Position numbers and translations under genes: made by a program | Notes under the pieces: model-generated | Databases searched by the model: none | Told to the model about the DNA's origin: nothing | Seen by the model: the letters and a program-made list of their open reading frames with translations, nothing else | NCBI RefSeq assembly: GCF_006345805.1 | Contig: NC_043014.1 | Coordinates: 11,842,001 to 11,906,000, forward strand | Direction: 5' to 3' | Origin: Octopus sinensis | Lineage: Eukaryota | DNA: 64,000 nt | Part shown: positions 13 through 50,227 of the stretch, one piece after another | Numbering within the stretch: the first letter of the stretch is position 1 | Layout of the letters: each line of letters opens with the position of its first letter

Positions 13-50
13 TCTTTTACGTTTCGAGCCTACGCTCTTCAACAGAAAGA
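13..50 (-). ncRNA. Hammerhead-like fold, second family (CUGUUGA core variant)
   Basis: Reverse complement: TCTTT-CTGTTGA-A-GAGC(GTAG)GCTC-GAAACGTA^AAAGA; perfect 5-bp stem I. Confidence 0.4.
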
Positions 51-95
51 TACACAGAAAAGAAACACGGAAAGAAACAAGGAGAAAAAAAATGC

Positions 96-3967: not shown

Positions 3968-3993
3968 CCACCTCGGGATCTTCTTTCTCCTAT

Positions 3994-4028
3994 GTTTCCG
4001 ACGAAGAGCTCCGCTCGAAACGTCATAC
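3994..4028 (+). ncRNA. Minimal PLE-type hammerhead (U4C variant)
   Basis: GTTT-CCGACGA-A-GAGC(TCC)GCTC-GAAACGTC^ATAC; one mismatch in stem I. Lies inside a TA-flanked repeat at 3965-4122. Confidence 0.45.
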
Positions 4029-4613
4029 CCTCCTTCTTCCCTTCTTTCCTGAGCGTCCAATAATACTTTATTTGTTCCACATCCTCGCGTTGTTGTCTTT
4101 TTGTTTTCTTGTTTGGATTAACTATATATATATATATATTATATATATATATCTATATATATATATAATTTTAAAGCTGAGTGTACACATCTGCGCCGAA
4201 TGATGCACTACAACCAGTTGTACAGTATTTCACCCGCGAGGGACCGATGAAAAATGGGTCGAAACGATCGTTGTGATTAATAAAGATTCTCGTGAATTCC
4301 GCTTTCTCCTTCTCTCATTTGTTACACACACACACACGTATGTATGTATGTATGTATGTATGTATGTAGTATGTATGTATGTATGTATGTATGTATGTAT
4401 GTATTATGTATGTATGTATGTATGTATGTATGTATGTATGCATGCATGCATATATGCATATATTGTCTCTTTTATCGAAATATCAGAGTGTATCTGCACA
4501 GCAATTTTGATTTGATAGATATAATTTAAATATTTTAACAAATTTTCTCAAATTATTTCAAAGGAAAACGTTGTAATCACTTATTTTTAATGAAAACAAT
4601 TGAAAAGAGCGGA

Positions 4614-16140: not shown

Positions 16141-16368
16141 TGTGACCGCGCGTGTACCGTTGGCGATTTTTTTTTCCTCCGTCTTCCCTTCTCTGGATCT
16201 TTCCTTTTCCTATGTTTCTGACATAGTATTATTGGACGCTCAGGAAGGAAGGGAAGAAGGAGGGTTTAACGTTTCGAGCGGAGCTCTTCGTCGGAAACAT
16301 AGGAGAAGGAAAGATCCAGAGAAGGGAAGACGGAGGTAAAAAAAATCGCCAACGGTACACACACGGTC

Positions 16369-16371
<3 letters not shown>
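16141..16371. mobile_element. PLE pseudo-LTR remnant in inverted arrangement
   Basis: 16141-16222 is the reverse complement of 16290-16371 (about 82 bp, few mismatches). Same family as 3965-4122, 40350-40510 and 42560-42780. Confidence 0.6.
16264..16298 (-). ncRNA. Minimal PLE-type hammerhead (U4C variant)
   Basis: Reverse complement: GTTT-CCGACGA-A-GAGC(TCC)GCTC-GAAACGTT^AAAC. Confidence 0.5.
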
Positions 16372-16419
<48 letters not shown>

Positions 16420-19059
16420 CGTGTGCATATGTACATGCATACATGGATAATTTGTCAAAAGCGTGGATTAGAGAATTTTGGCGTTTGTGTGTGTGTGTGT
16501 GGTGTGTGTGTGCGTTTCTTAACGCTTTGATCACATTTAATGACAATTATAATTCTCATTTTGGTTGCAACCTGTTGTTTATATTAATTTTATATAGATG
16601 TATATATATAGAGAGAGACATATATGTACGTTTGTATGTATGTACCTTGGTGTTTGTCCCACTCCACGATTGCTCGAGAACCGGTATTGATTTGTTAACG
16701 TTCCCGCAACATAGCGGTTTGCCAAAAGCGACCGATTTGACTAAAACCCTTCAAACTGGTGCCCCAGCATGGCCACAGTCCAATAGTTGAACCAACAAAA
16801 AGATAAAAGATAGACTGTAATTCATGATACGTTGGCCAGGGTTTGTTTTCAAAACAAATAAACATGAAAAACAATTCTATCGTAAAACTTGAATGTTATA
16901 TTATTTTCTTCTCCAGCAAGACGTTCCGAGGTGAAATAGTTATCATGGCTGCTTTACACGTGGGAGGTCGTTAGTTCGAATCTTGCTGGAACCTTAGATG
17001 CGTCGTTAGTTTCACTTTAATGCGACGAGCTGGAAGAGTCTTTACCTCGTCGGATGAAATGTTTAGTGGCAATTCGTCCGTTTTTAAGATGTGGGTTCAA
17101 ATTCCGCCATGATCGACTTTGCTTTTCATCCTTTCGGGGTCGATAAATTCCCCTGTCGATCACTGGGGTCGAAACAATTGACTAGCTCCCAGTCCCTAAA
17201 ATTTCAGGCTTTGTACCTAGAGTGGAAGGGATTATGTTTTTTCTCAAGCAAGAAAGCCGAGAATAGCAAAGTCGGTAGAGCTTTGGACAAAATGCTGCGT
17301 TGTATTTGGTTATATCTTTCAATGTTCTTGTTTCAAATCCCACCAGAAGCTAAAGGAGGCGAGCTGGCAGGAACGTTAGCACGCCGGGCGAAATGCGTAG
17401 CCGTATTTGTCTGCCGTTACGTTCTGAGTTCAAATTCCGCCGAGGTCGACTTTGCCTTTCTTCTTTTCAGGGTCGATAAATTAAGTACCAGTTACGCATT
17501 GGGGTCGAAATAATCGACTTAATCCGTTTGTCTGTCCTTGTTTGTTCTCTCTGTGTTTAGCCCCTTGTGGGTTGTAAAGAAATAGGTATTTCGTCTACCG
17601 TTACGTTCTGAGTTCAAATTCCGCCGAGGCCGACTTTGTCTTTCATCCTTTCGGGGTCGATAAATTAAGTACCAGTTACAAACTGGGGTCGATATACTCG
17701 ACTTAATCCATTTGTTTGTCCTTGTTTGTCCCCTCTACGTTTAGCCCCTTGTGGGTAGTAAAGAAGTAAGGAGCTAAAGGAGGTGTTTTTCATACTTGCT
17801 GAGTTTATAGAATAACTAACAAGTAAAGTGTTGGTTGGACGTGGGGGTGGAGTTAAATTAATTGACCATACCTCTACTTCCTTCGCAAATGTGGTATTGT
17901 ACTGAAATTAAAAATGCGTATCATTCCATTCAGATTTCAGGTACTGCTGCGGTCAACGTTGCTTTTCATTATTCTTTGATTGATGAAATAGAGTACATCT
18001 ATCCTCGTTTGCCACCGATCCATTTATCACTGATTCATTTATCATCGATTCATTTATCACTGATTCATTTATTATTGATTCGATATGCTTAGTTGTGAAC
18101 CGTGTGAGCTTTTAACGAACCGATCTGTGATAGCAGAGGGTGGTGAGCAGTCAAAGATCCTGTTTGGGCCATAAAAAAAAGAAAAAATGCGCCCTTGCGA
18201 TCATCCACAGAGCTCAGGATAACTTGGAGTCTCACAAGAAAACCTATTCCACCGCTACCCTCCATAAGTTCTATTATTCAGTCATCAATGATTCATTTAA
18301 CACGTAGTTTTTTTGTTTTTTTTGCCACTAAACATTCGTGACAGATCAATTAGATCAATTAAAAGACGGCGAGCTGGTAGAAACGCTAGCAAGCCGGATG
18401 AAATGCTTAGCGATATTTCGTCTGTCTTTACGTTCTGAGTTCAGATTCCGCCGAGGTCAACTTTGCCTTTTATCCTTTCGGGGATCATTAGATCAATTGC
18501 TAGTCGCTCTAATTGACTGGCCCTCTCCCACAAATTTCAGGCCTTGTCCCTACAGTAGAAAGGATTATTATTATTATTAAGATGGCGAAGTAGCAGAACT
18601 TTTAGCCCCCCGAACAAAATGCTTAGCGGTATTTCATCCGTCTTTATGTTCTGAGTTCAAATTCCGGTGAGGTTGAATTTGCTTTCAATCCTTTCGGGGT
18701 CGATAAAATTAGTACCAGTTCAACAGAGGGGTTGATGAAATTGACTTATCCACTCCCAAGAAATTGCTGGCCTTGTGCCAAAATTTGAAACTAATATTCG
18801 TAGAGTTTAGAGCGTGTTGTTCAATGTGACTACCCCTAATTCGGGAAAACCAAAAACCAGATCGATGTTGTACCTGTATTCTCATCTTTTGACCTTATCA
18901 CATCCTTCGTATCATCTCTATAACGATAATTGCCAAGTGTATTATAATGAAGAGCCCTTTGATTATTTATTCCTTTGTATATATGGTTTAATACAGTTTA
19001 CTACGACAGCTTCGTGATGTAATCAATGGTACGTCATTAGCAATTTATTTAATAATACG

Positions 19060-27360: not shown

Positions 27361-29832
27361 ACATAATTCCAGTCTCTTAAATATAGAACTATAATATCTA
27401 GAATTGTTCATTTTTGGTTGTCCAAGCACACAGAACACGTTTTATTGATGTGTTTATGTATCCAAATTACCCCTTCCTCTTTACATGTTTCAGTCAATGG
27501 ACTGCGACCATGCTGGAGCACCTCATGGAAGGGCTTAGTCCAACAAATTGACCCCAGAATTTTTTTATTTGTTTTTAATCTGCCACTTATTGTATCTCTC
27601 TGTTTTGTTGAATTTCTAAATTATGGAGACGTAAACAAATGCAAACCCGTTGTCACACACACACACACACATACACATACGACTTGCTTCCACACAGTTT
27701 CCTATTTCTTTATTGCCCACAAGGGGCTAAACGTAGAGAGGACAAACAACGACAGACAAACGGATTAAGTGGATTACATCGACTCCAGTGCGTAACTGGT
27801 ACTTAATTAATCGACCCCGAAAGGATGAAAGGCAAAGTCGACCTCGGCGGAATTTGAACTCAGAACGTAATGGCAGACGAAATACGGCTACGCATTTCGC
27901 CCGGCGTGCTAACGTTTCTGCCAGCTCTTTTCCGTCAACCGAATTCATTCACAAGGCATTGGTCGGCCTAGGGTTATAATGCAACACACTCTCCCAAAAC
28001 GCCACGCAGTGGGTGGGAGTGAACCCCTAACCACGTGGTCGTCTTGTAAAACGAGCTTCTAAACCACGCACCCATGCCTGCACCTATTGTTTAAGAACTT
28101 GTGGGTTCGTTAGTTTATTTTAACCATCATCGCTTAGACCACGCTGGAGCATATCAAATGAACACGCCACATCATTTCGTAAGAACACATCACCTACACT
28201 CCCGCCTACAATTAGCCACCACCTACGCCTAATCACTATGCATTCATCAGTTTACATATTTGTGTATTCATTCGTTGCAGGAAGTCCTTTTAAGCCCCTA
28301 TTTTATTCATTTACTGTTCATGACGTTATAGCTTTTGAGACAACTTGATTCACTTTTTCTGATTCATCATTAGTCACTTACAATGTTTTATATATCATGT
28401 ATCTAACCGACATTTTTATTTTGCAGTAGTAAACCAGACCTAGTTTCATCATCGAGAAAGCAGTCTTTATTGTGTGCAAAGGTAAATCTCATTCCTTTAT
28501 TTACTTGCCAACACAAATGGTTTCGTCTGTCTAAATCTTCTTTTCATGTTTTAATCTCATTTATATTTTTAGATTCTCCCAAGAACTACTAACTTTTGTT
28601 ACATTTACCAGACTCCAATTACAATCTTATACGATTACGTGACTTATAACTCACCCGTCCCTTCATTAACGTGTACCATATTGAATTGCGAAAGTGTGTG
28701 GCCAAATGGCAAGGATGTGGATCTTAAGATCGTAGTTTCGATTCGCGAACCGAGAAGTGCATTGTATTCTTCAGCAAAACACTTCATTTTATTTTGCTCG
28801 TGTCCACTCAGCTGTAAATGAGTAATCCTGCGAAGGAGTAGTTTTCTATTTAAGAGTAAAGTTGTAATCTTGGTCGCCTGTAATGCCATAGAAAGCGGAC
28901 AACTGGATCTATGAGTCCAAGGAGTCGAGCAAGAGGAGTTAAGTCAGCGAGCTGGCAGAATCGTTAGCACGCCGGGCGAAATGCGTAGCCGTATTTCGTC
29001 TGCCGTTACGTTCTGGGTTCAAATTCCGCTGAGGTCGACTCTGCCTTTCATCCTTTCGGGGTCGATTAAATAAGTACCAGTTACGCACTGGAGTCGATAT
29101 AATCGACTTATTCCGTTTATCTGTCCTTGTTTGTCCCCTCTGTGTGTAGCCCCGTGTGGGCAGTAAAGAAATAAGAACAGTTGGCACGCCGAGCAAAATG
29201 CTTAGCAACGTTTCGTCCGTTCTGAGTTCAAATTCTGCCGAGGTCGACTTTGCCTTTCATCCTTTCGGAATCAATAGAATAAGTACCAGTTTAGTACTGG
29301 GGTCGATCTTATCGACTATCCCCCTCACCCAGATTCCAGGCCTTGTGCCTATAATAGAAAGGATTATTATTAGTATTATTATGGCAGCGATCTCGCAGAG
29401 TTGTTAGCACGCCGGGAAAATGCTTGGCGGTTTTTCGTCCATCTTTACGTTCTGAGTTCAAATTCTGCCAAGGTCGACCTTGCTCTTCATCCTTTCGGTT
29501 TCGATAAAATAAGTACCAGTCGAGTACTGGGGTCGATTTAATCGACTATCCCTTCTCCCAAATTTCAGACTCCTGTGCCTGTAGTAGAAAGAGAAAGTTC
29601 ATTAACGTTTCCGACATCAGTGCTTCTTCAAATGAAAACGAGAAGCATATAAGAAATGAGAAAGAGAAGTAATGAGGAGAAAAGAGGCGAAGGAACCAGA
29701 GGGAAATGCTATTCTATGAGGTAGTAAAGAAAGAAGGAAGAAACCGCTGTGTAGATGCAAGTATAAGAGTGAGTCTGCGCTTGGAAGTTGTATAAGAAGA
29801 GAATATTGTGATTATCGTGAGCACGTGTGTAT

Positions 29833-37097: not shown

Positions 37098-37266
37098 GGA
37101 ACAATGACTTTGGAAGAACCAATTCCATTACCTAACGATTTCAGATTCAATCCAAACCCAAACAAATGGCAACCTACGAAGAAATTAATCAGTCGGACAG
37201 GTTATTTCTTATGCATCAACGAAGATGGACTCGTATACAGCAGCATCGAACACGTGGATTGCAACG
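37098..37266 (+). CDS. FGF: FGF coding exon 1 (ATG at 37104)
   Basis: Acceptor tttgttacttttatctttacAG ends at 37097; donor G|GTAGGT at 37267 (phase 1). Encodes ...KKLISRTGYFLCINEDGLV... The acceptor implies at least one further upstream exon. Confidence 0.9.
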
Positions 37267-38610
37267 GTAGGTTTAGCTTTGACAAAATGGTTCTGTTCAG
37301 GGAAGAAAAAAAATAATGAAGACGGCGAGCTGGCAGAAACGTTAGCACGCCGGGCGAAATGCTTTGCGGTATTTCGTCTGCCGTTACGTTCTGAGTTCAA
37401 ATTCCGCCGAGGTCAACTTTGCCTTTCATCCTTTCGGGGTCGATTAAATAAGTACCAGTTACGCACTGGGGTCGAGATAATCGCTTAATCCGTTTGTCTG
37501 TCCTTGTTTGTCCTCTCTGTGTTTAGCCCCTTGTGGGTAGTAAAGAAATAGGTATTTCGTCTGCCGCTAATTTCTGAGTTCAAATTCCGCCGAGGTCTAC
37601 TTCGCCTTTCATCCTTTCGGGGTCGATAAATTAAGTACCAGTTACGCACTAGGGTCGATATAATCGACTTAATCCGTTTGTCTGTCCTTGTTTGTCCCCT
37701 CTGTGTGTAGCCCCTTGTGGGCAATAAAGAAATAAGAATGGTTCTGTTTCATGACAGAATGGTTCTGTTCAGGGGTGGGGAGAAAGCCGTGGAGCTGGCA
37801 GAAACGTTAGCACGCCGGAACAATGTGGGTTGTAAAGAAATAGATATTTCGTCTGCCGTTACGTTCTGAGTTCAAATTCCGCCGAGGTCGACTTTGCCTT
37901 TCATTCTTTCGGGGTCGATAAATTAAGTACCAGTTACGCACTGGAGTCGATGTAATCGACTTAATCCGTTTGTCTGTCCTTGTTTGTCCCCTCTGTGTGT
38001 AGCCCCTTGTGGGCAATAAAGAAATAAGAATGGTTGTTTCATCTTTGGTTACTTGTGCTCCCTAATACTTTCTGAACGTTACTAGGACAGTGAGCTGGCG
38101 GAACCTTTCGCACACCGAATAAAACGCTTAAGGGCAGAATGCTTGCCGTTCTTAGTTCAAATCTCGCCGAGGTTGACTAAGCCTTTTATTCTTTCCGGGC
38201 TAATAAAATAGGTACTATTTAGACACTGGGGTTGATGTAATCGACTTGTCCCTTGCTTGTTCCTGCTGACCTTGTGCCCAAATTTTACACCTATATTTTT
38301 GAGTGCTTCAGCTAGGTGATCTAACAGTCATAATTAGTAAAGTGATGATGAACAGGTTTTTTTAAAGATGTTTAGTTATGTTCTTTCATCATCTTTTATT
38401 TGTTTCAGTCATTAGACTGTGGCCATGCTGAGGCACCGCCTTGAAGAATTTCATTTGAACGAATGGATCCCAGAACAATTTTTAACGCCTAGTACTTATT
38501 TTATCGGCGTTACGAAGGCGTGTGCAAACCATACTGATTGACAAGCGGTGGTGGAGGACAAACACACACACGCACGCACACACACACGCACGCACACATA
38601 CACACACACA

Positions 38611-39414: not shown

Positions 39415-39824
39415 GTGGCTGTGTGGTAAGTAGCTTGCTTACGAACCACATGGTTCCGGGTTCAGTCCCACTGCGTCGCACCTTGGGCAAGTGTCTTCTA
39501 CTATAGCCTCGGGCCGACCAAAGCCTTGTGAGTGGATTTGGTAGACGGAAACTGAAAGAAGCCCGTTTTATATATGTGTATATATGTATGCGTGTGTGTT
39601 TGTGTGTCTGTGTTTGTTCCCCCTCCCTAACATCGCTTGACAACCGATGGTGGTGTGTTTACGTCCCCGTAACTTAGCGGTTCGGCAAAAGAAACCGATA
39701 GAATAAGTACTAGGCTTACAAAGAATAAGTCCTGGGGTCGATTTGTTCGAAATTAAAGCGGTGTGCTCCAGCATGGCCACAGTAAATGACTGAAATAAGT
39801 AAAAGAGTAAAAGATATATATATA

Positions 39825-40054: not shown

Positions 40055-40504
40055 GTAAGAATTTACAAAAAAAAATAGAAAGACGAAGACGGGTGTGTAA
40101 ACAACAAACAGATGTATTAGTTTAACGCTCGGGAAGTGAGAAAGTCTTTTACGTTTCGAGCCTACGCTCTTCCACAGAAAGGAACACAGAAATAAACATG
40201 GAGAGAAAACAAATAATAAAGACAGAAAATGGAATGTACGTGAAATTTTGTTACTCACAACAACCATTTCAATCCATCCTGCATCGATTCCTCGCAGGTG
40301 AGGTACTGTGCGACAGTTCCGAAACAGCTTCATGCATTTCACCGAAGACGTCTTTCCTTCTCCTATGTTTCCGACGAAGAGCTCCGCTCGAAACGTTAAA
40401 CCCTCCTTCTTCCCTTCTTTCCTGAGCGTCCAATAATATTTTATTTGTTCCACGTCCTCGCGTTGTTGTGTTTTTTTTGTTTTTTTGCGTTTTCTTGTTT
40501 GGAT

Positions 40505-40539
<35 letters not shown>

Positions 40540-42093
40540 AGAGAAATTTTAATTATTTATTTATGCCCCCTTTTCAAGCCTAGCCAAGCTCATAGGCCCA
40601 GTTTCTCGGTTTCTATCGCGTATGTGTTCTATCCAGCTGGACGGGACGCCAGTCCATCGCAGCGTTACTCAAGAAACAGAAAGAAAGAGTGAGAGGAAGT
40701 TAGAGCGAAAGAGTACAACAGGGGTCACCACCACCCCTGCCGGAGCCTCGTGGAGCTTTAGGTGTTTTCGCTCAATAGACACACACAACGCCCGGTCTGG
40801 GAATCGAAACCGCGATCCTCCGACCGCGAGGTCCGCTGCCCTAATCACTGGACCATTGTGCCTCCAGTTAGCTAGCTAGATATAGATATCAATTTGATGT
40901 GCATTTACAAATTTTGTACATTTTGTATATAAGCTTATTCAAGCCGAAAAATAACTTACAATCTTCCACGCCAATGATAATCACGTACGAGAATAAAATC
41001 TACGTTATTGGCAGTACATGAAGTAACATCTTTTTCTAGTTACTTGGTGGTGGTGGTGGTGGGGGGGATTATGAATATTCTAAATTATTATATAGAGTGT
41101 CAATACATTAGATGTTCGTAACGAATATGATAGAAGTAGTAAAAATAATAGCGAATCAAAATATATTAGATTAACGATACTGCTTATCTTTATTCCACTG
41201 GTAGCAGCAGGGACACCGCCAACAGTAATTCTTATATGGTAACCATAATAATCATGCTGTTCGTGATAGGTTCATTAATATTGTTATAGTTCGTAATAAC
41301 GAGACTACCAAATCTGTAGTCGTGGAGGCGCAATGGCCCAGTGGTTAGAATAAATATCGGTCTTGAAATAAAGTGAAAGACGTACTGAGGGTTGATTCAT
41401 TCGACAGAAAATTCTTCATGGTCGCAGTCTAATGACTGAAACAAGTAAAATATAAAAGGAGAGTGTAAAAATTTTCAGTGGAGGCGCAATGGCCCAGTGG
41501 TTAGGGCAGCGGACTCGCGGTCGGGGGATCGTGGTTTCAATTCCCAGACCGGGCGTTGTGTGTGTTTATTGAGCGAAAATACCTAAAGCTCCACGAGGCT
41601 TGACAGGTGGTGGTGGCGATCCCTGCTGTACTCTTTCGCCCCAACTTTCTCTCACTCTCTCTTCCTGTTTCTTGAGTAACGCTGCGATGGACTGGCGTCC
41701 CGTCCAGCTGGGGGGAGCACATACGCCACAGAAACCGGGAGACCGGGCACATGAGCCTGGCTAGGCTTGAAAAGGGCGCAGAAAAAAAATGTGTTGTTAA
41801 ACAATCCATTGCCTTCGGTTTCAGTCCTACTGTGCGGCATTTTGTGCAAGGGTCTTGTACTATAGACCCAGGTTAACTAATGTCTGCGAGTGAACTTGGT
41901 AGACGGAAATTGTGTGGAATCCTGTCGTATGGGTGCAAGCGTGGATGTGTGGTGAGAAGTTTGCGTCCCAACCATATAGTCCCAGGTTCAGTCCCTCTGC
42001 ATGGCATCTTGGGCACGTGTCTTCAACTATAGCGTCAGGCTGACCAAAGCCTTGTGAGTGGATTTAGTAGATGGAAACTGAAAGAAGTCCGTC

Positions 42094-42171
<78 letters not shown>

Positions 42172-44666
42172 ATCACGTGACCGACCAGGCTATCAGATGT
42201 TGCTACACATCGCTGGTCACAACCGATGCTAGTGTGTTTACGTCCCCGTAACTTAGCGGTTCGGCAAAACACACCGATAGAATAAGTACTAGGCTTACAA
42301 AGAATAAGTCCTGGGGTCGATTTGCTCGACTAAAGGCGATGCTCCAGCCTGGCCGCTGTCAAATGACTGAAACAAGTAAAAGAGTAACTGCAACGTAGGT
42401 GTTCTCTTTTTCACTGATCTTCAGCTTTATATTAACATCCGCTGGGCAGTTAATTTGAAATTAGGCATCCTCGCTTTCGGCCTCGTGAACCCCATCAAAC
42501 CTATATATGTACGCATACGACGCATACATAAGTACATACATACACACACACACGCACGCATTGTTATGACCACGTGTGTATCGTTGGCGATTTTCTTTCT
42601 CCGTTTTCCCTTCCTTGGATCTTTCCTTTTTTTCTATGTTTCTGACGAAGAGCTCCGCTCGAAACGTTAAATCCTCATTCTTTCTTTCCTTTCCTGAGCG
42701 TCCAATAGCACTATATATGTTCTACGTCCTCGCGTTGTTGTGTTTTCTCTTTGTTCATGTTTGGAGTAACTACATATATATATTTCGTTTTTGGATTTGG
42801 TTTGCAAGATTCTTTATATGAGTTCGTGTGTTGAAGCATATTCTGTTGTGTCTGGGGAGAGTCATTTTCTTTTTGTGCCTTATAATTTAACACACTCACC
42901 GGTAAAATTTCCACTTATTTCTTATTTTTATTTTCACAAAATTTTCGTTGCGTCTTGCAACCTTTTCAATAGTCTTGACTCTGTTATTTACACTGCGTTC
43001 CTTTTTGTTTGTTTGTGCGCATGTGCGTGGGTCAGTGTGTGTGTGTGCCTATGCATGCATGCACGTACATATGTATGTGTGTATGTATGTATGCATGTGT
43101 ATGTATGTATATATGTGTGTGTGTACATCTGTATGTATGTGTCCTGTATATTCATGTACTTGCATGTCCGTGTTTGCGTATTTTCTACGTATGTGTGCGT
43201 GTGAGCGTGTGTTTGTATATGTATGCACCTCTGTCTCCTTGTGTGTATATACAGTATATATATATACATTTTTTACTGACAGCTTTGTTGCAGTTTGAAA
43301 CAGTGGATACAGGAATAGTAACAATCAAAGGAGTGCAGAGCGGCCGATACTTGGCATTCAATAGCAAAGGAGTTTTATGTGGTGTGGTAACTATATATTT
43401 TATTGCTTCTCTCTTCTTTTTTCATTGTCATTCTTTATCTCTCTCCTTTCCCCTCTCTATCTTTCCCCCCTCTCTCTCTGTCATTGTGCATGTCTGCGTG
43501 TGTGGACGCAGGAGCCCTAGTGCTTAGGGTGTTGGGTTCAAGATCACGTGATTATGGTTTCAGTTCTCAGATCGGCGAAGTGTTGCGTTCTTGAGCAAGA
43601 CACTTCATTTCCCGTTGCTCCAGTTCATTCATGTATAAAATGGATAACCCTATAACAGACTGGGTGTTTGCCTGCCCACCCAACCAGCTGGGTGGTACCA
43701 TTCGAAAGCTACATCAATGTGACGAAGCCGTATTGTGTCTATAACAACGTCCAATAGATGTCGCTACAGAGACACAGAGGCACAGTGATATATATATATC
43801 CTGTTGTGTCACTTCCTTAGTTGTTTGCTCAGCGAAACTTATATTATTAATGATGTTTGTATCAATATTATGAACTAGCACTATGACCTGACAACGCCGG
43901 ATCATAGTGCTAGTGCATGCATATACAGCTGCGATTACTGTCCAAATCTCCAACCAATCACATACAGCTAGCTGGCATTCAATTAGTGTATCAAGTTTCG
44001 GGCATTTTGATTGGGTTTTGGATAGAAAATTCACAAAAAGTCACTTCTATTGATTTTTTAATGGCTTTGCGGGGTGACTGGGGAAATGTAAAGATGTGCA
44101 CGACCACCTTTGGACGGTTTTGAATGACCATAGAAAGTGCGAGCCCTCTAACTGAAAAATTGTAGATTTGTATAAAGGACACATAGACAGACATTTTGCC
44201 GTTTATATAGAGAGATTAGATAAAACTTGCTGCTGTAAGCAACAAATGAACACCAAGCATCGTCTCGTGGCACACCTAGCATCGTCTCGTGGCACACCTA
44301 GCATCATCTCGTGGCACACCTAGCATCGTCTCGTGGCACACCAGTGTGCCGCGACATACCGATTGCAGAGCACTGATCTAGACAAAACGTTAATTAATAT
44401 TTCAAAATGCTAATTAATATTTCGACCTCCTTTCCTCAACTTATTCTTTACTTTCCATTTCCATTCTTTTTTTTTTTCAGCCAACCAAAGATGAGTCTTG
44501 TAGTTTCCACGAAAGGATGAAAAGCCTATACACGCTTTACAAATCAGAGAAATATTCCAAGAAAAAATGGTTCCTTGCTATTAGCAAACGCGGCAGAATA
44601 AAGAACGGCAGAAAGTCACGAACACGAAAGAAACATTCCCAATTTTTACCAATAAAAGATATGTGA
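37104..44666 (+). CDS. FGF: Fibroblast growth factor, spliced model join(37104..37266,43283..43386,44481..44666), 150 aa, no signal peptide, subfamily unresolved
   Basis: Hand-spliced protein: MTLEEPIPLPNDFRFNPNPNKWQPTKKLISRTGYFLCINEDGLVYSSIEHVDCN-ALLQFETVDTGIVTIKGVQSGRYLAFNSKGVLCGV-PTKDESCSFHERMKSLYTLYKSEKYSKKKWFLAISKRGRIKNGRKSRTRKKHSQFLPIKDM*. It has the FGF beta-trefoil motifs (G.FL.I..DG, G.V.IKGV.SGRYLA....G, conserved C..F.ER, WF.A...G, FLP). Total CDS 453 nt, intron phases 1 and 0, GT-AG sites. Confidence 0.93.
37320..38035 (+). mobile_element. Family-M SINE multimer about 55 nt downstream of FGF exon 1
   Basis: Same head and body as the other family-M copies; three units. Confidence 0.85.
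39050..39372. repeat. Dispersed repeat ending in a hairpin, possibly a rolling-circle element terminus
   Basis: Homologous to 57510-57785 and 47946-48000; ends with TACGGTCT-TACCTTTG-AGACCGTA (8-bp stem). Confidence 0.6.
39412..39815 (+). mobile_element. Composite SINE (tRNA head + CORE-like domain + microsatellite + Meta-like domain + RTE-type tail), family C
   Basis: GTGGCTGTGTGGTAAG head, CCTTGGGCAAGTG core, (TA/TG)n linker, tail GCATGGCC.CAGTCAAATGACTGAAACAAGTAAAAGAG. More than 25 copies, e.g. 1478-1810, 5755-6130, 11365-11770(-), 19705-20125(-), 26660-27085, 30860-31230(-), 36920-37065(-), 38395-38700(-), 41935-42390, 47375-47890, 48008-48415, 49002-49405, 52500-53350, 59540-60025(-), 62995-63375. 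Confidence 0.85.
39886..40000. mobile_element. 115-bp element inserted in (TA)n
   Basis: ACGTGATCACGTGACCGACCAG...GCAGGCCAA between TA tracts; partial second copy at 42166-42221. Confidence 0.6.
40145..40182 (-). ncRNA. Hammerhead-like fold, second family (CUGUGGA core variant)
   Basis: Reverse complement: CCTTT-CTGTGGA-A-GAGC(GTAG)GCTC-GAAACGTA^AAAGA. Confidence 0.4.
40367..40401 (+). ncRNA. Minimal PLE-type hammerhead (U4C core variant) in FGF intron 1
   Basis: GTTT-CCGACGA-A-GAGC(TCC)GCTC-GAAACGTT^AAAC; 4-bp stem I. Confidence 0.5.
42638..42672 (+). ncRNA. Minimal PLE-type hammerhead (canonical CUGACGA core) in FGF intron 1
   Basis: GTTT-CTGACGA-A-GAGC(TCC)GCTC-GAAACGTT^AAAT, with palindromic ACGT stem III as in dimer-cleaving PLE hammerheads. 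Confidence 0.6.
43283..43386 (+). CDS. FGF: FGF coding exon 2 (104 bp)
   Basis: Acceptor ttttactgacAG (43281-43282), donor GTG|GTAACT (43387). The length is exactly the 104 bp typical of the FGF middle exon. Encodes LLQFETVDTGIVTIKGVQSGRYLAFNSKGVLCGV. Confidence 0.95.
44256..44342. repeat. 22-bp tandem repeat x4 in FGF intron 2
   Basis: AGCATCGTCTCGTGGCACACCT x4, followed by GTGTGCCGCGAC...CACTG-ATCTAGAC, which resembles a decayed hAT/Charlie end. Confidence 0.85.
44481..44666 (+). CDS. FGF: FGF coding exon 3 with stop codon
   Basis: Acceptor ttcttttttttttttcAG ends at 44480, phase 0. 61 codons then TGA (44664-44666). Contains CSFHER, WFLAISKRG and QFLP. Missed by the ORF track. Confidence 0.94.
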   Translation, partial: PTKDESCSFHERMKSLYTLYKSEKYSKKKWFLAISKRGRIKNGRKSRTRKKHSQFLPIKDM

Positions 44667-44899
44667 AGGAGTAACCAAGACGACCAGAATAAAGGAAATA
44701 ACTAAAATAAATTATTGTAGCTGGAAAACAATAAAAACAAAAAACAAAAATGAAGCCAAAAACAAACAAAATAACAAATAAAAATGAAAAATATTATACA
44801 ACTAACGAAAGAAAGTGAAACCTCTTGATCTATCAATGGTAAATTCTAGAATCATTTGTCTACCGTCCATTTATTAGAATTTCCTTCATTAATAAATAT

Positions 44900-44943
44900 A
44901 TGATCTGACGAAGGCTAGCAGGCCGAAACTTCGAAGTCATTGT
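44900..44943 (+). ncRNA. Type-I hammerhead ribozyme fold with canonical core, in the FGF 3' UTR or 3' flank
   Basis: ATGAT-CTGACGA-A-GGCT(AGCA)GGCC-GAAA-CTTCGAAG-TC^ATTGT. Stem I is 5 bp with two G:U pairs, stem II is 4 bp, stem III is the palindrome ACTTCGAAGT, and the GUC cleavage triplet ends at 44938. Confidence 0.75.
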
Positions 44944-45067
44944 CACCCTTTCTTGTAAAGATTTAATAAACATATTCTTTACTAAAATGTATAAATGTTC
45001 GGAATAATTTTTCAATTTAATATTGGAGTATTTTTTTACATATGACTTGACATAAAAACAAACATTC

Positions 45068-45098
<31 letters not shown>

Positions 45099-45309
45099 TG
45101 TATGTATGTATGTATGTATGCATGCATGCATGCATGCATGTATGTATGTATGTATGTATGTATGTATGTATTTTTGTATGTATGTATGCATGTATTATGT
45201 ATGTATGTATGTATGTATTTATGTATGTATGAATGTATGTAGTATGTATTTATGTATGCATGTATGCATGTATGTATGTATTTATGTATGCATGTATGTA
45301 TGTATGTAC

Positions 45310-45340
<31 letters not shown>

Positions 45341-45535
45341 TGTATTTATGTATGTATGTATGTATGTATGTATGTACATACGTACGCACGTAAGTGTATA
45401 TATGTGGTGTGCCACGTAAAATCATCATTTGAAATCTTTGTTCGTCATCTCACTAGAAGCTTCCTATCTTTGAGAATTGTGTTTTTCTATCGGTTTGAGA
45501 TTCACTCTGGAACAAACTTATTGCATATGTCATGC

Positions 45536-46169
45536 ATGATCGTCATAAAGTGCTGTAGCGTTATGATCGTCATAAGTGCTGTAGCTTTATGATCGTCATA
45601 AAGTACTGTAGCTTTATGATCGTCATAAAGTACTGTAGCTTTATGATCATCATAAAGTACTGTAGCTTTATGATCGTCATAAAGTGCTGTATCTTTATGA
45701 TAGTCATAAGTGCTGTAGCATCATAATCGTCATAAGTGCTGTAGCTTTATGATCGTCATAAAGTGCTGTAGCTTTATGATCGTCATAAGTGCTGTAGCTT
45801 TATGATCGTCATAAAGTACTGTAGCTTTATGATCATCATAAAGTGCTGTAGCTTTATGATCGTCATAAAGTGCTGTAGCTTTATGATGGTCATAAGTGCT
45901 GTAGCTTTATGATGGTCATAAGTGCTGTAGCTTTATGATCGTCATAAGTGCTGTAGCTTTATGATCGTCATAAGTGCTGTAGCTTTATGATCATCATAAA
46001 GTGCTGTAGCTTTATGATCGTCATAAAGTGCTGTAGCTTTATGATCGTCATAAGTGCTGTAGCTTTATGATCGTCATAAGTGCTGTAGCTTTATGATCGT
46101 CATATGTGCTGTAGCTTTATGATCGTCATAAAGTACTGTAGCTTTATGATCGTCATAAGTGCTGTAGCT
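45536..46169. repeat. Minisatellite, about 24 copies of a 26/27-bp unit
   Basis: Unit GTGCTGTAGCTTTATGATCGTCATAA(A); 24 CTGTA cores counted by hand; no unique spacers. Confidence 0.95.
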
Positions 46170-46460
46170 ATGTGTAGAGAGTCTGGTAGACGAGTAGTGT
46201 TCCAAGACCATTTTTTGAATACCTTTCCAATCAGCCTTATGAAAGTTCAGGCAGGAAAGGAGTCGAATGCTTCTAGTAGCCTGCACACCTGCAGTTCTCT
46301 GTGGACTATACATTGTTAGTTCTATTAAGCTCGGGTCCGAGAAAGTAGCCATTGTCACCGTAACATTATGGATGAGCGTTTAGTTATTTGCGAAGCCAAG
46401 GTTCAGAACATTTTTAATACCTTCTCATTCTTAAATGTGCCATTTAATGTCTCTCAGGTG
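46170..46460 (-). pseudogene. LINE endonuclease-linker fragment (CR1/L2/Jockey group)
   Basis: The minus strand reads SDPSLIELT...CLNFHKADWKGIQ, resembling the SDH...LNF.KADW motif that follows the APE domain. Confidence 0.55.
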
Positions 46461-47359: not shown

Positions 47360-47619
47360 GTATGTATATATAGGCCTGGCTGTGTGGTAAAAAGCTTCCG
47401 TTCCAATCACATGGTTCCGGGTTCAGTCCCACTGCGTGGTACCTTGGGCAAATGGTTTCTACTATAGCCTCGAGCCGACCAAAAGCTTGTGAGTGGATTT
47501 GGTAGACAGAAACTAAAAGAAGCCCGTCGTGTATATATATATATGTGTGTGTGCGTGTGTGTTTGTGCGTGCGTGTGTGTGTGAGTGTGTGTGTGTGTGC
47601 GCGTGCGTGTGCGCGCGCG

Positions 47620-47650
<31 letters not shown>

Positions 47651-48437
47651 TGTATTTAGGTATTTCTGTGTTTCTGTGTCAGTGTTTGTCCCCGCACCAT
47701 CACTTGACAACCAATGTTGGTGTGTTATGTCCCCGTGATCTAGCCGCCCGGCAAATGACACCGATAGAATAAGTACAAGGCTTACAAAAAATACGTCCTG
47801 GGGTTGATTTGTTCGACTAAAAGCCCGCAAGGTGGTGCTCCAGCATGGCCGTAATCAAAAGAAAATAATCGAAACAAATAAAAGTGGCAAGTAGCTTGCT
47901 TATCAACCACATGGTTCTGGTTTCAGTCCCACTGCGTGGTACCTTGTAATATCTTTACGGTCTTGCCTTTGAGACCATATATGTGCGTATCCAAACACTA
48001 TATATATAGTGGCTGTGTGGTAAGTAGCTTGCTTACGAACCACATGGTTCCGGGTTCAGTCCCACTGCGTGGCGCCTTGGGCTAGTGTCTTCTACTATAA
48101 CCTCGAACCGACCGAAGCCTTGTGAGTGGATTTGGTAGATGGAAACTGAAAGAAGCCCGTCGTATATATATGTCAATGTATATATATGTGTGTGTGTGTG
48201 TTTCTGTGTCTGTGTTTCTCCCCCCAACATCGCTTGACAGCAGATGCTGGTGTGTTTTTCGTCCCCGTCACTTAGCGGTTCGGCAAAAGATATCGATAGA
48301 ATAAGTACTAGGCTTACAAAGAATAAGTCATGGTGTCGATTTGCTCGACTAAAGGCGGTGCTCCAGCATGGCCGCAGTGAAATGACTGAAAGAAGTAAAA
48401 AATAGTAAAAATATATACATACATACATACATATATA

Positions 48438-48469
<32 letters not shown>

Positions 48470-48842
48470 GAAACAACAGGACTCTTTTAAAGGTGTTGAG
48501 GTATATTTGAGGCTGATTTAACTGCTACTTCTAGTAAGAATTCAAACAGACATTAGTTGTGTATTTAACACATATATACACGACGGGCTTCTTTCAGTTT
48601 CTGTTTACCAAATTCAACTCACAAGCCTTTGGTCGGCTCGAGGCTATAGTAGAAGACATTTGCCCAAGGTGCCACGCAGTGGGACTGAGCCGGAACCAAG
48701 TGGTTGGAAAGGAAGATTTTTACCCCACAGCCAGGCCTATATATATATACATATAATATATTATATATATATATAGGATATATATCTTTATATATATATA
48801 TATATATATCATCTTTTATATATATTATATATATATATATAT

Positions 48843-48880
<38 letters not shown>

Positions 48881-50227
48881 ATATATATATATGTATATAT
48901 ATATATATATGTATATATTATATATATGTTATAATATATATATATATATATATATACTATATCTATATATATATATATATAGATATATATATATATCTTT
49001 TATGTGGCTGTGTGGTAAGTAGCTTGCTAACCAACCACATGGTTCCGGGTTCAGTCCCACTGCGTGGCATCTTGGGCAAGTGTCTTCTGCTATAGCCCCG
49101 GGCCGACCAATGCCTTGTGAGTGGATTTGGTAGACGGAAACTGAAAGAAGCCTGTCGTATATATGTATATATATATATATATGTTTGTGTGTGTGTTTGT
49201 GTGTCTGTGTTTGTCCCCCTAGCATTGCTTGACAACCGATGCTGGTGTGTTTACGTCCCCGTCACCTAGCGGTTCGGCAAAAGAGACCGATAGAATAAGT
49301 ACTGGGCTTACAAAGAATAAGTCCCGGGGTCGATTTGCTCGACTAAAGGCGGTGCTCCAGCATGACCGCAATCAAATGACTGAAACAAGTAAAAGTGTAA
49401 AAGAGTATATATATATATATATATAATATATATATAAGATAAGAAGAAACTGACCTCATTATTGTTGTGTATTCGAGGCTATAGTAGAAGTTATCTGCAC
49501 AAGGTACCACGCAGTGGGACAGAAACCAGAACCATGTGGTTGATAAGCAAGCTACTTGCCACAGGTAATTTTAGTGATGGGAAATGGGAGAAAACTATAA
49601 TTGCTCTGAGAATAAATTTCCTCAGTCGCCTCCCCTGCTTGCTAAACTTACTAAAATATTATTTCATTGATATTTTGTATTTCTCCATCACATTATTACA
49701 CATATCCCCTTTTGTCACTAATCCATTCTTCACTGATGCTGGGGATAATACGGTTCACTAATACTGAACCGTGTTATGCTTATCACGAATTGATTTTTAA
49801 TAAAACGAATCACGAAAATCCGTTCCAATTTCCACTCACAATGTTCAGAATAACTTGGTGACTCGGAGCGAAAACTTACGTCTTATCCATATCATCGATT
49901 ATTCATTTATCACTGATTCATAGCTTCTTTCTTTTAATCAGAACACAAACCAAACATCCGCGATAAACGAGGATAGACGTATTTCTATTCAAATTCTAAT
50001 ATTTCCTGCTCTGGTTATAACAGCAATTTTTCGTGCCCCTTAGCTTCTCTTACGTGATTTATTTACCATAAACATTAAGTGATTATAAATTAGTAAATGT
50101 TGGAAAGATTCAATTTCAGGGAAGTGATACAATTTAAAATCTTCGATTGCAAAGCACTTTATTTTTCTCCACTGAAATTCCTGATAGCCTTATAGAAGTC
50201 ATAAGCATCCCATTCCCAATGTAATTA

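What the first reader, a model, noticed from the sequence alone, without database searches (positions are those of the whole stretch)
44880..44975. Intact-core hammerhead ribozyme in sense orientation just after the FGF stop codon, between two poly(A) hexamers
Seen: all canonical core nucleotides (C3UGACGA9, G12AAA, GUC17) with stems I-III. The core starts 239 nt after the TGA, and the predicted cut after C44938 lies 42 nt downstream of AATAAA 44891-44896 and 27 nt upstream of AATAAA 44965-44970. Established: an extra A between A9 and G10.1 occurs in an active viroid hammerhead (CChMVd); small hammerheads with palindromic stem III accompany Penelope-like elements; a 3' UTR hammerhead lowers expression of rodent Clec2 genes. 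Inference: this PLE-derived ribozyme could destabilise long FGF 3' UTR isoforms, or aid termination after the proximal poly(A) site. That would be a self-cleavage switch coupled to alternative polyadenylation on a growth-factor mRNA. Stem III (ACTTCGAAGT) can form 3 bp plus a 4-nt loop, so it might work as a monomer. It may equally be a neutral transposon relic.
Basis: partly seen in the sequence, partly recalled or inferred. Interest (0 to 1): 0.8.

Follow-up and report, generated by a model that had tools for sequence, protein, structure and literature searches.

The report
Relic transposon hammerhead in octopus FGF 3'UTR
A real but minimal hammerhead-ribozyme motif, of the kind that Penelope-like retrotransposons scatter by the thousands through animal genomes, sits in the 3' untranslated region of an Octopus sinensis FGF1-like gene; everything tested says it is a stranded, drifting transposon remnant and not a self-cleaving switch.

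Summary
At 44900-44943 (+) every hammerhead core nucleotide is present with stems I-III, 239 nt after the stop codon of a three-exon FGF gene (100% identical to O. sinensis 'fibroblast growth factor 1'). It is not chance: 0 of 1,000 dinucleotide shuffles of the window give any hit. Its oddities (extra A between A9 and G10.1, 5-bp helix I, 10-nt palindromic helix III, no loop-loop contacts) are the published hallmarks of Penelope-like-element (PLE) minimal hammerheads. Single copies of those showed no detectable cleavage in vitro. The regulatory reading is not supported. No Rfam hammerhead model matches. The hammerhead fold costs 8 kcal/mol more than a competing hairpin, with stem I pair probability 0.00. 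The site is orthologous in O. vulgaris and O. bimaculoides but diverges at the local background rate. Every substitution in stem I weakens or breaks a pair, with no covariation, and both orthologues fail the descriptor that O. sinensis passes. The proximal AATAAA is O. sinensis-only and is one of seven such hexamers in this A-rich UTR. A second such motif, in intron 1, belongs to a decaying dispersed repeat. Verdict: an ordinary solo PLE-type hammerhead relic.

The parts
37104..37266 (+). FGF1-like exon 1 (coding part), GT donor at 37267
   Evidence: tblastn and splice-site reading; the product is identical to XP_029647533.1, and the NCBI CDS span of 7,563 nt matches
43283..43386 (+). FGF1-like exon 2 (104 nt)
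   Evidence: Pfam FGF profile positions 33-66
44481..44666 (+). FGF1-like exon 3 coding part, stop TGA 44664-66
   Evidence: translation; Pfam FGF E=1.7e-13, profile positions 71-124 of 124
44667..44899 (+). A-rich 3'UTR upstream of the motif. It evolves more slowly than intron and includes a 79-nt block (44816-44894) with no substitution in three species and five further AATAAA hexamers.
   Evidence: 4.7% versus 9.2% intron divergence, P=0.008; alignment A2; hexamer count. The extent of the mature UTR is inferred, not shown.
44891..44896 (+). Proximal AATAAA, specific to O. sinensis (AATATA in the other two species), lying within a (TA)n-like tract
   Evidence: position 44895 is A/T/T in O. 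sinensis/O. vulgaris/O. bimaculoides
44900..44943 (+). HH1, the reported PLE-type minimal type-I hammerhead motif (whole)
   Evidence: sequence; descriptor hit and 0/1000 shuffles
44900..44904 (+). Helix I 5' strand (AUGAU). It is continuous with the (TA)n tract and reads ATAAG in O. vulgaris and ATAAT in O. bimaculoides.
44905..44912 (+). Core box C3-A9 (CUGACGA) plus the bulged A between A9 and G10.1
   Evidence: invariant in three species; the bulge is a conserved PLE min-HHR trait
44913..44924 (+). Helix II (GGCU/GGCC, 3 G-C plus 1 U.G) with loop AGCA (AGCG in O. vulgaris)
   Evidence: pair probability 0.36-0.40 in context
44925..44938 (+). G12AAA, palindromic helix III/loop 3 (ACUUCGAAGU, 44928-37) and the cleavage-site nucleotide C17 (44938)
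   Evidence: invariant in three species; helix III pair probability about 0.08
44939..44943 (+). Helix I 3' strand (AUUGU; ACAGU in O. bimaculoides)
44965..44970 (+). Distal AATAAA, conserved in all three species; the likeliest terminal poly(A) signal (inference)
   Evidence: orthologous alignment continues only to about 45037
42638..42672 (+). HH2, a second core-intact PLE-type min-hammerhead with the same bulged A. It lies in FGF intron 1, inside a dispersed repeat.

Best explanation
HH1 is a solitary minimal type-I hammerhead motif of the kind carried in the terminal repeats of Penelope-like retroelements (PLEs). It was left in the terminal exon or 3' flank of the Octopus FGF1-like gene by an old, probably 5'-truncated insertion next to a (TA)n tract, before O. 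sinensis, O. vulgaris and O. bimaculoides diverged. As a lone copy inside an mRNA it has no partner for the double-hammerhead conformation these motifs use. It also lacks the loop-loop contacts that make hammerheads active at cellular Mg2+, and it is out-competed by a local hairpin. It is therefore catalytically silent or nearly so, and is drifting neutrally, with helix I already eroding. Shown here: the motif, its non-random nature, its PLE-type anatomy, orthology in three species, background-rate divergence, non-compensated helix I changes, and unfavourable folding. Inferred: PLE origin (from architecture only), lack of activity, and the position of the mRNA 3' end.
For: Anatomy matches the published PLE min-HHR criteria: catalytic boxes, a nucleotide between 9 and 10.1, G10.1-C11.1, palindromic 15.2-16.2/loop 3, and a 4-5 bp helix I. 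A (TA)n-like tract abuts the 5' side, and (TA)n is a preferred PLE target. Such motifs are reported in thousands per metazoan genome, mostly as solo copies from truncated PLEs. The same window holds a second one (HH2) in a repeat family flanked by (TA)n, including a head-to-head inverted pair, which is a PLE signature. Divergence O. sinensis versus O. bimaculoides is 6.8% for HH1, against 9.2% intron and 4.7-7.1% flanking UTR; versus O. vulgaris it is 6.8%, against 1.7-2.6%. All helix I changes weaken or break pairs, and the orthologues fail the descriptor. The HHR fold is -0.7 kcal/mol against an MFE of -8.7, P about 6e-7, with helix I probability 0.00 in 200-nt context; z-score is -0.5. The double-HHR homodimer is +0.3 kcal/mol relative to two folded monomers. 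There is no Rfam hammerhead hit. In the literature, a single min-HHR showed no detectable cleavage. An Anolis PLE hammerhead cleaved only with the element's protein, and no RNA-seq reads ended at its site. In Xenopus, retrozyme copies overlapping exons lie mostly in 3'UTRs.
Against: The 13 core nucleotides and helices II and III carry none of the five substitution events seen in the 44 nt (post hoc P about 0.003), which could hint at constraint. However, a 79-nt invariant block lies just upstream, and two of the events are in a hypermutable (TA)n tract. No paralogue of HH1 and no PLE reverse-transcriptase or GIY-YIG remnant was found in 143 kb examined, so PLE ancestry rests on architecture alone. 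Helix II has 4 bp, not the 6-8 bp typical of many PLE min-HHRs. Nearest-neighbour energies ignore core tertiary stabilisation and protein chaperones. No cleavage or transcript data were available.
Confidence: 0.8

Rival explanations
1. Exapted 3'-end module. The PLE-derived fragment (HH1 plus the roughly 100-130 nt downstream) supplies the gene's terminal poly(A) signal (AATAAA 44965-70) and downstream element. The hammerhead sequence is then a passenger inside a co-opted transposon end, retained because it lies in the mature UTR, not because it cleaves.
For: The distal AATAAA is conserved in all three species, and orthologous alignment persists about 70 nt beyond it and then stops. The (TA)n tract marks a plausible insertion boundary right at the 5' edge of HH1. 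PLE hammerheads lie near element 3' ends in pLTRs. Exon-overlapping retrozyme copies concentrate in 3'UTRs in Xenopus.
Against: Five other AATAAA hexamers lie upstream, so the mRNA may end before HH1. The segment from HH1 onward evolves at a rate indistinguishable from intron (7.0% versus 9.2%, P=0.25), and O. bimaculoides has a 10-nt deletion right after the hexamer. No element boundaries or paralogues could be defined.
Confidence: 0.25
2. One reading: HH1 is an active or conditionally active self-cleaving ribozyme that removes the poly(A) tail from long 3'UTR isoforms, or aids termination, tuning FGF1-like expression in the way the Clec2 3'UTR hammerhead does.
For: The core is intact and sense-oriented, and lies 27 nt upstream of a conserved AATAAA. 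The core and helices II and III are unchanged in three species. A PLE hammerhead can be activated by protein, so poor in-silico folding does not exclude assisted cleavage.
Against: Helix I is broken in O. bimaculoides (2 of 5 pairs) and at the critical 1.1-2.1 pair in O. vulgaris, without compensation. Divergence is at the background rate. The proximal poly(A) hexamer is lineage-specific. There are no tertiary loop contacts, and the hammerhead fold is about 8 kcal/mol above the MFE. Dimerisation has no driving force. There is no Rfam hit. Solo min-HHRs are inactive in vitro. Clec2 is a different architecture, a discontinuous type III hammerhead.
Confidence: 0.05
3. Chance resemblance: an A/T-rich UTR happens to contain CUGANGA...GAAA with foldable spacers.
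For: Rfam models do not recognise it. Helix I may be fortuitous pairing with a (TA)n tract. The fold is not more stable than shuffles.
Against: There were 0 hits in 1,000 shuffles with helix I required, and 0.002-0.008 expected per window without it, against 1-2 observed. It also has features the descriptor did not demand: a perfect 10-nt palindromic helix III, the bulged nucleotide, G10.1-C11.1, and the same CUGACGAAG string as a bona fide repeat-borne motif 2.2 kb away.
Confidence: 0.03

Closest known systems
Minimal hammerheads of Penelope-like elements (min-HHRs; Cervera & De la Pena 2014, PMC4209133)
   Same: Type-I topology; full catalytic boxes; an unpaired nucleotide between A9 and G10.1; the G10.1-C11.1 pair; a short (5 bp) helix I with no loop 1; a small palindromic helix III/loop 3; no helix I-II tertiary contacts. 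It occurs as a solo genomic copy next to a (TA)n tract.
   Different: Helix II has only 4 bp (many PLE families have 6-8). No flanking pLTR or ORF and no family of paralogues could be shown with the sequence available. It sits inside a host gene's terminal exon.
Dimer-dependent type-I hammerheads of satellite or retrozyme repeats (newt, Schistosoma Sm-alpha, metazoan non-LTR retrozymes; PMC7229834, preprint 10.64898/2026.07.22.740005)
   Same: A short palindromic helix III that implies a double-hammerhead active form; association with PLE-related retroelements; a reported tendency of exon-overlapping copies to lie in 3'UTRs.
   Different: Those are tandem arrays carrying canonical loop 1-loop 2 tertiary contacts, and they are expressed as circRNAs. 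HH1 is single-copy, lacks those loops, and has no tandem partner within the loci examined.
Discontinuous hammerhead in the 3'UTR of rodent/platypus Clec2 genes (Martick et al. 2008, as reviewed in PMC6155905)
   Same: A hammerhead core in sense orientation in the 3'UTR of a protein-coding gene, upstream of a poly(A) signal; a proposed link to polyadenylation-site control.
   Different: Clec2 is a type III hammerhead split over 150-1500 nt, with demonstrated cleavage and conservation across mammals. HH1 is a compact minimal type I with decaying helix I and no activity data.
The HH2 repeat family in the same window (42638-42672 and copies)
   Same: The identical CUGACGA-A-G string, a 4-bp helix II, GAAAC, a palindromic helix III, an A/U helix I, and the same strand as the FGF gene.
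   Different: A covariance model of that family scores HH1 at only 11.8 bits (E=1.6), and the flanks are unrelated. The family's subfamily consensus cores are already defective (U4C; A6U).

Membership tests
PLE minimal hammerhead (min-HHR) | Catalytic boxes C3UGANGA9, G12AAA, and H17 after U16.1 | tested here: met
   44905-11, 44925-28, U44937-C44938; invariant in three Octopus species
PLE minimal hammerhead (min-HHR) | [quoted passage not shown] | tested here: met
   A44912; criterion taken
PLE minimal hammerhead (min-HHR) | G10.1-C11.1 closing pair of helix II | tested here: met
   G44913-C44924
PLE minimal hammerhead (min-HHR) | Palindromic positions 15.2-16.2 and loop 3 (capacity for a double hammerhead) | tested here: met
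   ACTTCGAAGT at 44928-37 is a perfect 10-nt palindrome. However, the double-HHR homodimer is no more stable than two folded monomers.
PLE minimal hammerhead (min-HHR) | Short helix I of 4-5 bp | tested here: inconclusive
   5 bp (3 A-U plus 2 G.U) in O. sinensis; 4 bp with the 1.1-2.1 pair broken in O. vulgaris; 2 of 5 pairs broken in O. bimaculoides
PLE minimal hammerhead (min-HHR) | Enlarged helix II (6-8 bp) in most metazoan families | tested here: not met
   4 bp including a U.G. This is typical of, not obligatory for, the class (describes variants).
PLE minimal hammerhead (min-HHR) | Location in a PLE pseudo-LTR, or membership of a genome-wide consensus family with covariation | not testable with these tools
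   No paralogue in the window or in L001/L002 (143 kb). No RT or GIY-YIG in the ten largest ORFs. The octopus genome is not searchable here.
PLE minimal hammerhead (min-HHR) | Self-cleavage (weak, dimer- or protein-assisted) | not testable with these tools
   Folding only: the HHR fold is -0.7 versus an MFE of -8.7 kcal/mol
Canonical type-I hammerhead (Rfam Hammerhead_1 and related models) | Match to an Rfam hammerhead covariance model, including the loop 1/loop 2 tertiary-contact architecture | tested here: not met
   No hammerhead family at gathering score, nor at E<=10 on 401 nt or 76 nt
Regulatory 3'UTR hammerhead (Clec2-type) | Discontinuous type III architecture | tested here: not met
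   HH1 is a contiguous 44-nt type I; Clec2 is described
Regulatory 3'UTR hammerhead (Clec2-type) | Structure maintained by selection across species (covariation, or slower evolution than the flanks) | tested here: not met
   6.8% divergence versus 4.7-9.2% background; helix I changes are all disruptive; no compensatory pair
Regulatory 3'UTR hammerhead (Clec2-type) | Demonstrated cleavage and an effect on expression | not testable with these tools
   No transcript contigs encode this protein in the collections
HH2 dispersed repeat family of this window | Significant match to the family covariance model or to its flanks | tested here: not met
   11.8 bits, E=1.6, against 58-69 bits for members; no flank similarity

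The most novel reading that the evidence does not exclude
A PLE-derived minimal hammerhead has been kept in the FGF1-like 3'UTR, 27 nt upstream of the conserved poly(A) signal, as a conditionally active cleavage site. It would be silent on its own but switched on by a chaperone or by PLE-encoded protein, as reported for an Anolis PLE hammerhead. Bursts of retroelement expression, or a host factor, would then detach the poly(A) tail and down-regulate a growth-factor mRNA. The invariance of the core and helices II and III in three species would be the trace of that constraint.
Probability: 0.04. Interest if true: 0.65.

Novelty: new member of a known kind. Interest (0 to 1): 0.15.

Why it matters
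If it were active, it would be the first invertebrate example of a hammerhead controlling a developmental signalling mRNA, and a compact type-I counterpart of the Clec2 case. As the evidence stands, its value is practical. It shows that an 'intact-core' hammerhead in a UTR is the expected by-product of PLE activity in a repeat-rich cephalopod genome. It also shows that core intactness among congeners only about 9% diverged says nothing about function. Finally, it shows that helix I covariation and lineage-specific poly(A) hexamers are quick discriminators between relic and ribozyme. It adds an octopus data point to the reported tendency of hammerhead-bearing retroelement copies that overlap exons to lie in 3'UTRs.

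Tried and rejected
(1) Rfam at gathering score on the whole window, and at E<=10 on 401 nt and 76 nt, gave no hammerhead family, only microsatellite-driven miRNA noise.
(2) MFE folding of 44893-44950 gave a competing hairpin, z=-0.5.
(3) A protein search with the 61-aa exon alone found nothing. The full 150-aa product found only the Octopus cluster.
(4) An exhaustive HMMER search of 1.84 billion representatives gave a next-best FGF at only 34-45% identity. No further orthologues are reachable, so no outgroup is available to polarise 44940-41 or to find an empty site.
(5) A lookup of contigs encoding the exact protein returned only the genome record and no transcripts, so the true 3' end is unknown.
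(6) BLAST of the HH1 flanks against the window and both orthologous loci found no paralogue.
(7) A covariance model built from the HH2 family did not significantly recover HH1, so I rejected the idea that HH1 and HH2 are copies of one element or the two ends of a retrozyme or PLE. No direct repeats link them.
(8) I rejected an HH1-HH2 heterodimer by inspecting the helix III strands: only 2 bp are complementary at each end.
(9) Pfam on the ten largest ORFs found no RT or GIY-YIG remnants.
(10) I considered the 0-of-5 substitution pattern in the core and helices II and III as evidence of constraint (P about 0.003). I discounted it as post hoc: a 79-nt invariant block lies adjacent, and two of the events fall in a (TA)n tract.
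(11) The cmsearch hit at 29595-29638 (-) has no pairable helix II, so I did not count it.

Full report
OBSERVATION.
- Helix I: 5'-AUGAU (44900-04) with AUUGU (44939-43).
- Core: C3UGACGA9 (44905-11), then an extra A (44912).
- Helix II: GGCU/GGCC around AGCA (44913-24).
- G12AAA (44925-28).
- Helix III: ACU/AGU around UCGA, i.e. the perfect palindrome ACTTCGAAGT (44928-37).
- C17 = 44938.
The TGA at 44664-66, the 239-nt distance, and the two AATAAA hexamers (44891-96, 44965-70) are all correct.

The upstream ORF is the C-terminal exon of an FGF (Pfam FGF, E=1.7e-13). I located exon 2 (43283-43386, the classic 104 nt) and exon 1 (37104-37266) by tblastn and splice-site reading. The 150-aa product is 100% identical to 'fibroblast growth factor 1 [Octopus sinensis]' XP_029647533.1. 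The NCBI CDS span of 7,563 nt matches my model. The window is therefore O. sinensis chromosome CM016876.1.

IS IT MORE THAN CHANCE? Yes. I wrote a descriptor just permissive enough to accept this instance: 5-bp helix I with G.U allowed, an optional bulge, helix II of at least 3 bp closed by G-C, and helix III of at least 3 bp. It finds only this site in the real window and nothing in 1,000 dinucleotide-preserving shuffles or in the reversed sequence. With helix I dropped entirely, the expectation is 0.0017-0.008 per window against 1-2 observed. The shuffler was validated on the CTGANGA count, 24.2+/-4.9 against 28 real. Features the descriptor did not demand are also present: the full 10-nt palindrome, G10.1-C11.1, and the bulge.

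WHAT KIND OF HAMMERHEAD? No Rfam hammerhead model matches, neither at gathering score nor at E<=10 on 401 nt or 76 nt. That is because the motif lacks loop 1 and the loop-loop contacts of canonical type-I ribozymes.

Its apparent anomalies are the published hallmarks of the minimal hammerheads of Penelope-like elements. [quoted passage not shown] They report thousands of copies per metazoan genome, mostly solo and probably from truncated PLEs. The extra A is therefore a family trait, not a CChMVd-like curiosity.

A (TA)n-like tract (AATATATATATAAT in the other two species) abuts the 5' side. (TA)n is a preferred PLE target, and PLE hammerheads lie near element 3' ends. PLE ancestry remains an inference from architecture. 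I found no paralogue of HH1 in 143 kb and no RT or GIY-YIG remnant in the ten largest ORFs.

A SECOND COPY AND ITS FAMILY. The pattern search turned up 42638-42672 (+), in FGF intron 1: GUUU-CUGACGA-A-GAGC-UCC-GCUC-GAAA-CG-U-U-AAAU, with the same CUGACGAAG string. It lies in a dispersed repeat with at least six copies in the window. The copies are flanked by (TA)n, and one forms a head-to-head inverted pair at 16143-16222/16223-16369, which is a PLE signature.

Across the copies helix II is conserved while its loop differs (UCC versus GUAG). The two subfamily consensus cores, however, are defective: CCGACGA (U4C) and CUGUKGA (A6U). HH2's intact CUGA is thus probably a CpG-to-TpG change. A decayed copy also exists in O. 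bimaculoides.

A covariance model built from this family alone recovers its members at 58-69 bits but scores HH1 at 11.8 bits (E=1.6). HH1 is therefore a different element, and the two are not the ends of one retrozyme or PLE. No direct repeat links them. The point for the finding is density: hammerhead-derived debris is common here, so one landing in a UTR is unremarkable. In Xenopus, exon-overlapping retrozyme copies lie mostly in 3'UTRs.

CONSERVATION TEST. I fetched the orthologous loci of O. bimaculoides (L001) and O. vulgaris (L002). Exon 3 and the UTR align contiguously to about 45037 in both, so the insertion predates these species. The variable sites, in the order O. sinensis/O. vulgaris/O. 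bimaculoides, are:
- 44895 A/T/T
- 44902 G/A/A
- 44904 T/G/T
- 44920 A/G/A
- 44940 T/T/C
- 44941 T/T/A

Consequences:
(i) The proximal AATAAA exists only in O. sinensis. It is also one of seven AATAAA between 44651 and 44970, against 1.8 expected from composition. The 'between two poly(A) hexamers' geometry is therefore neither conserved nor distinctive. The distal hexamer is conserved.
(ii) Helix I is not maintained. O. vulgaris has G.A at the 1.1-2.1 pair. O. bimaculoides has A.C and A.A. The O. sinensis-specific A-to-G change turns an A-U into a G.U. No change is compensatory. Both orthologues fail the descriptor that O. sinensis passes.
(iii) Rates: O. sinensis versus O. bimaculoides gives intron 9.2%, CDS 5.4%, UTR before HH1 4.7%, HH1 6.8%, and UTR after HH1 7.1% plus a 10-nt deletion. 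O. sinensis versus O. vulgaris gives 2.6, 1.1, 1.7, 6.8 and 2.1%. HH1 is not slower than its surroundings. The UTR upstream of it is constrained (P=0.008 against the intron rate), whereas HH1 plus the downstream segment is not (P=0.25).

The core and helices II and III carry none of the five substitution events (post hoc P about 0.003). However, a 79-nt invariant block (44816-44894) lies adjacent, two of the events are in the (TA)n tract, and at about 9% neutral divergence only about 3 changes would be expected in those 30 nt. I treat this as at most a faint hint of constraint.

FOLDING. For the 44-mer the hammerhead secondary structure scores -0.7 kcal/mol, against an MFE of -8.7 for a hairpin that pairs G8/A9 and neighbouring bases with the helix III loop. 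P(HHR) is about 6e-7. In O. bimaculoides the hammerhead fold is +3.6. In 200-nt context, pair probabilities are 0.00 for helix I, 0.36-0.40 for helix II, and about 0.08 for helix III. The local fold is no more stable than shuffles (z=-0.5).

The double-hammerhead homodimer that the palindrome would allow scores -17.1, against -17.4 for two folded monomers, so two separate mRNAs have no driving force to pair. From inspection of the helix III strands, an HH1-HH2 heterodimer would offer only 2 bp at each end.

One caveat: nearest-neighbour models ignore core tertiary interactions and chaperones. Published experiments agree in direction. A single min-HHR gave no detectable cleavage, and dimers only weak cleavage, mostly at non-physiological Mg2+. 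An Anolis PLE hammerhead cleaved only when the PLE protein was added, and no RNA-seq reads ended at its site.

MECHANISM AND VERDICT. Best explanation (confidence about 0.8): a solo PLE-type minimal hammerhead left by an old, probably 5'-truncated insertion at a (TA)n tract in the terminal exon or 3' flank of the FGF1-like gene. It is catalytically silent or nearly so, and is drifting.

A reasonable secondary reading (about 0.25, and compatible with the first) is that the same fragment donated the conserved distal poly(A) signal. Pure chance is excluded (about 0.03).

The Clec2 comparison is functional only. Clec2 is a discontinuous type III ribozyme with shown activity.

Noticed in passing
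window 42638-42672 (+), FGF intron 1: A second core-intact PLE-type minimal hammerhead (GUUU-CUGACGA-A-GAGC-UCC-GCUC-GAAA-CGU-U-AAAU) with the same bulged A. It is present in O. vulgaris (L002 43119-43160, with helix I weakened to GCUU). The surrounding region found no orthologous match in O. bimaculoides.
   Followed up: yes
window 3984-4135 (+), 40351-40521 (+), 16223-16369 (-), 16143-16222 (+), 15-93 (-), 40147-40196 (-); L001 17815-17855: A dispersed repeat of about 240 nt carrying a hammerhead-derived segment. It is flanked by (TA)n, and one locus is a head-to-head inverted pair (a PLE-like signature). Two subfamilies each have a different core defect in their consensus (CCGACGA = U4C; CUGUKGA = A6U). 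Helix II is conserved while its loop differs, which suggests the family spread without an intact catalytic core.
   Followed up: partly
window 44816-44894 (and 44667-44899 overall): The 3'UTR stretch upstream of the hammerhead is more conserved than intron (4.7% versus 9.2% between O. sinensis and O. bimaculoides, P=0.008). It contains a 79-nt block with no substitution in three species, which makes it a candidate regulatory UTR element unrelated to the hammerhead.
   Followed up: no
window 44651-44970: There are seven AATAAA hexamers in about 320 nt of A-rich sequence (1.8 expected from composition). Which one is used is unknown.
   Followed up: partly
window 45060-45420; 45509-46174; 44250-44359: A long (ATGT)n/(ATGC)n microsatellite lies immediately after the conserved UTR block. 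Downstream is a minisatellite with a 26-27 bp period, about 25 copies, also present in O. vulgaris. A 22-bp tandem repeat (4 listed copies) lies in intron 2. The microsatellite generates spurious miRNA hits in Rfam E-value mode.
   Followed up: no
window 39415-39663, 41941-42189, 47376-47624, 48009-48257, 49004-49252 (and inverted copies near 48611-48691, 49472-49563): Multiple copies of a SINE-like repeat of about 250 nt with a tRNA-like box-B-type segment (GGTTCCGGGTTCAGTCCC), inside and downstream of the FGF gene. They account for much of the intron 1 size difference from O. bimaculoides (gene span 4.1 kb there, 7.6 kb here).
   Followed up: no
window 16922-16994 (+): The only Rfam gathering-level hit in the window is a borderline tRNA match (30.0 bits against a cutoff of 29, with several mismatched pairs). 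It is probably a tRNA-derived repeat, not a functional tRNA gene.
   Followed up: no
window 40556-40830 / 41514-41788: A large inverted repeat (275-nt arms, 87% complementary, 683 nt apart) in FGF intron 1, possibly a foldback or MITE-like element.
   Followed up: no
L002 (O. vulgaris) 10001-45171: The O. vulgaris annotation of the orthologous gene gives a 181-aa product from a 35-kb gene model, against 150 aa in O. sinensis and O. bimaculoides. This implies an extra upstream exon or a different start. In O. sinensis the frame is also open upstream of the ATG, back to 36921.
   Followed up: no
window 29595-29638 (-): A weak covariance-model hit (13.3 bits, E=0.68): UUCAU-UUGAAGA-A...GAAACGUU-A-AUGAA. 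Helix I is a perfect 5 bp, but the core box is altered (UUGAAGA) and helix II cannot pair. It is either a heavily decayed hammerhead relic or chance.
   Followed up: partly
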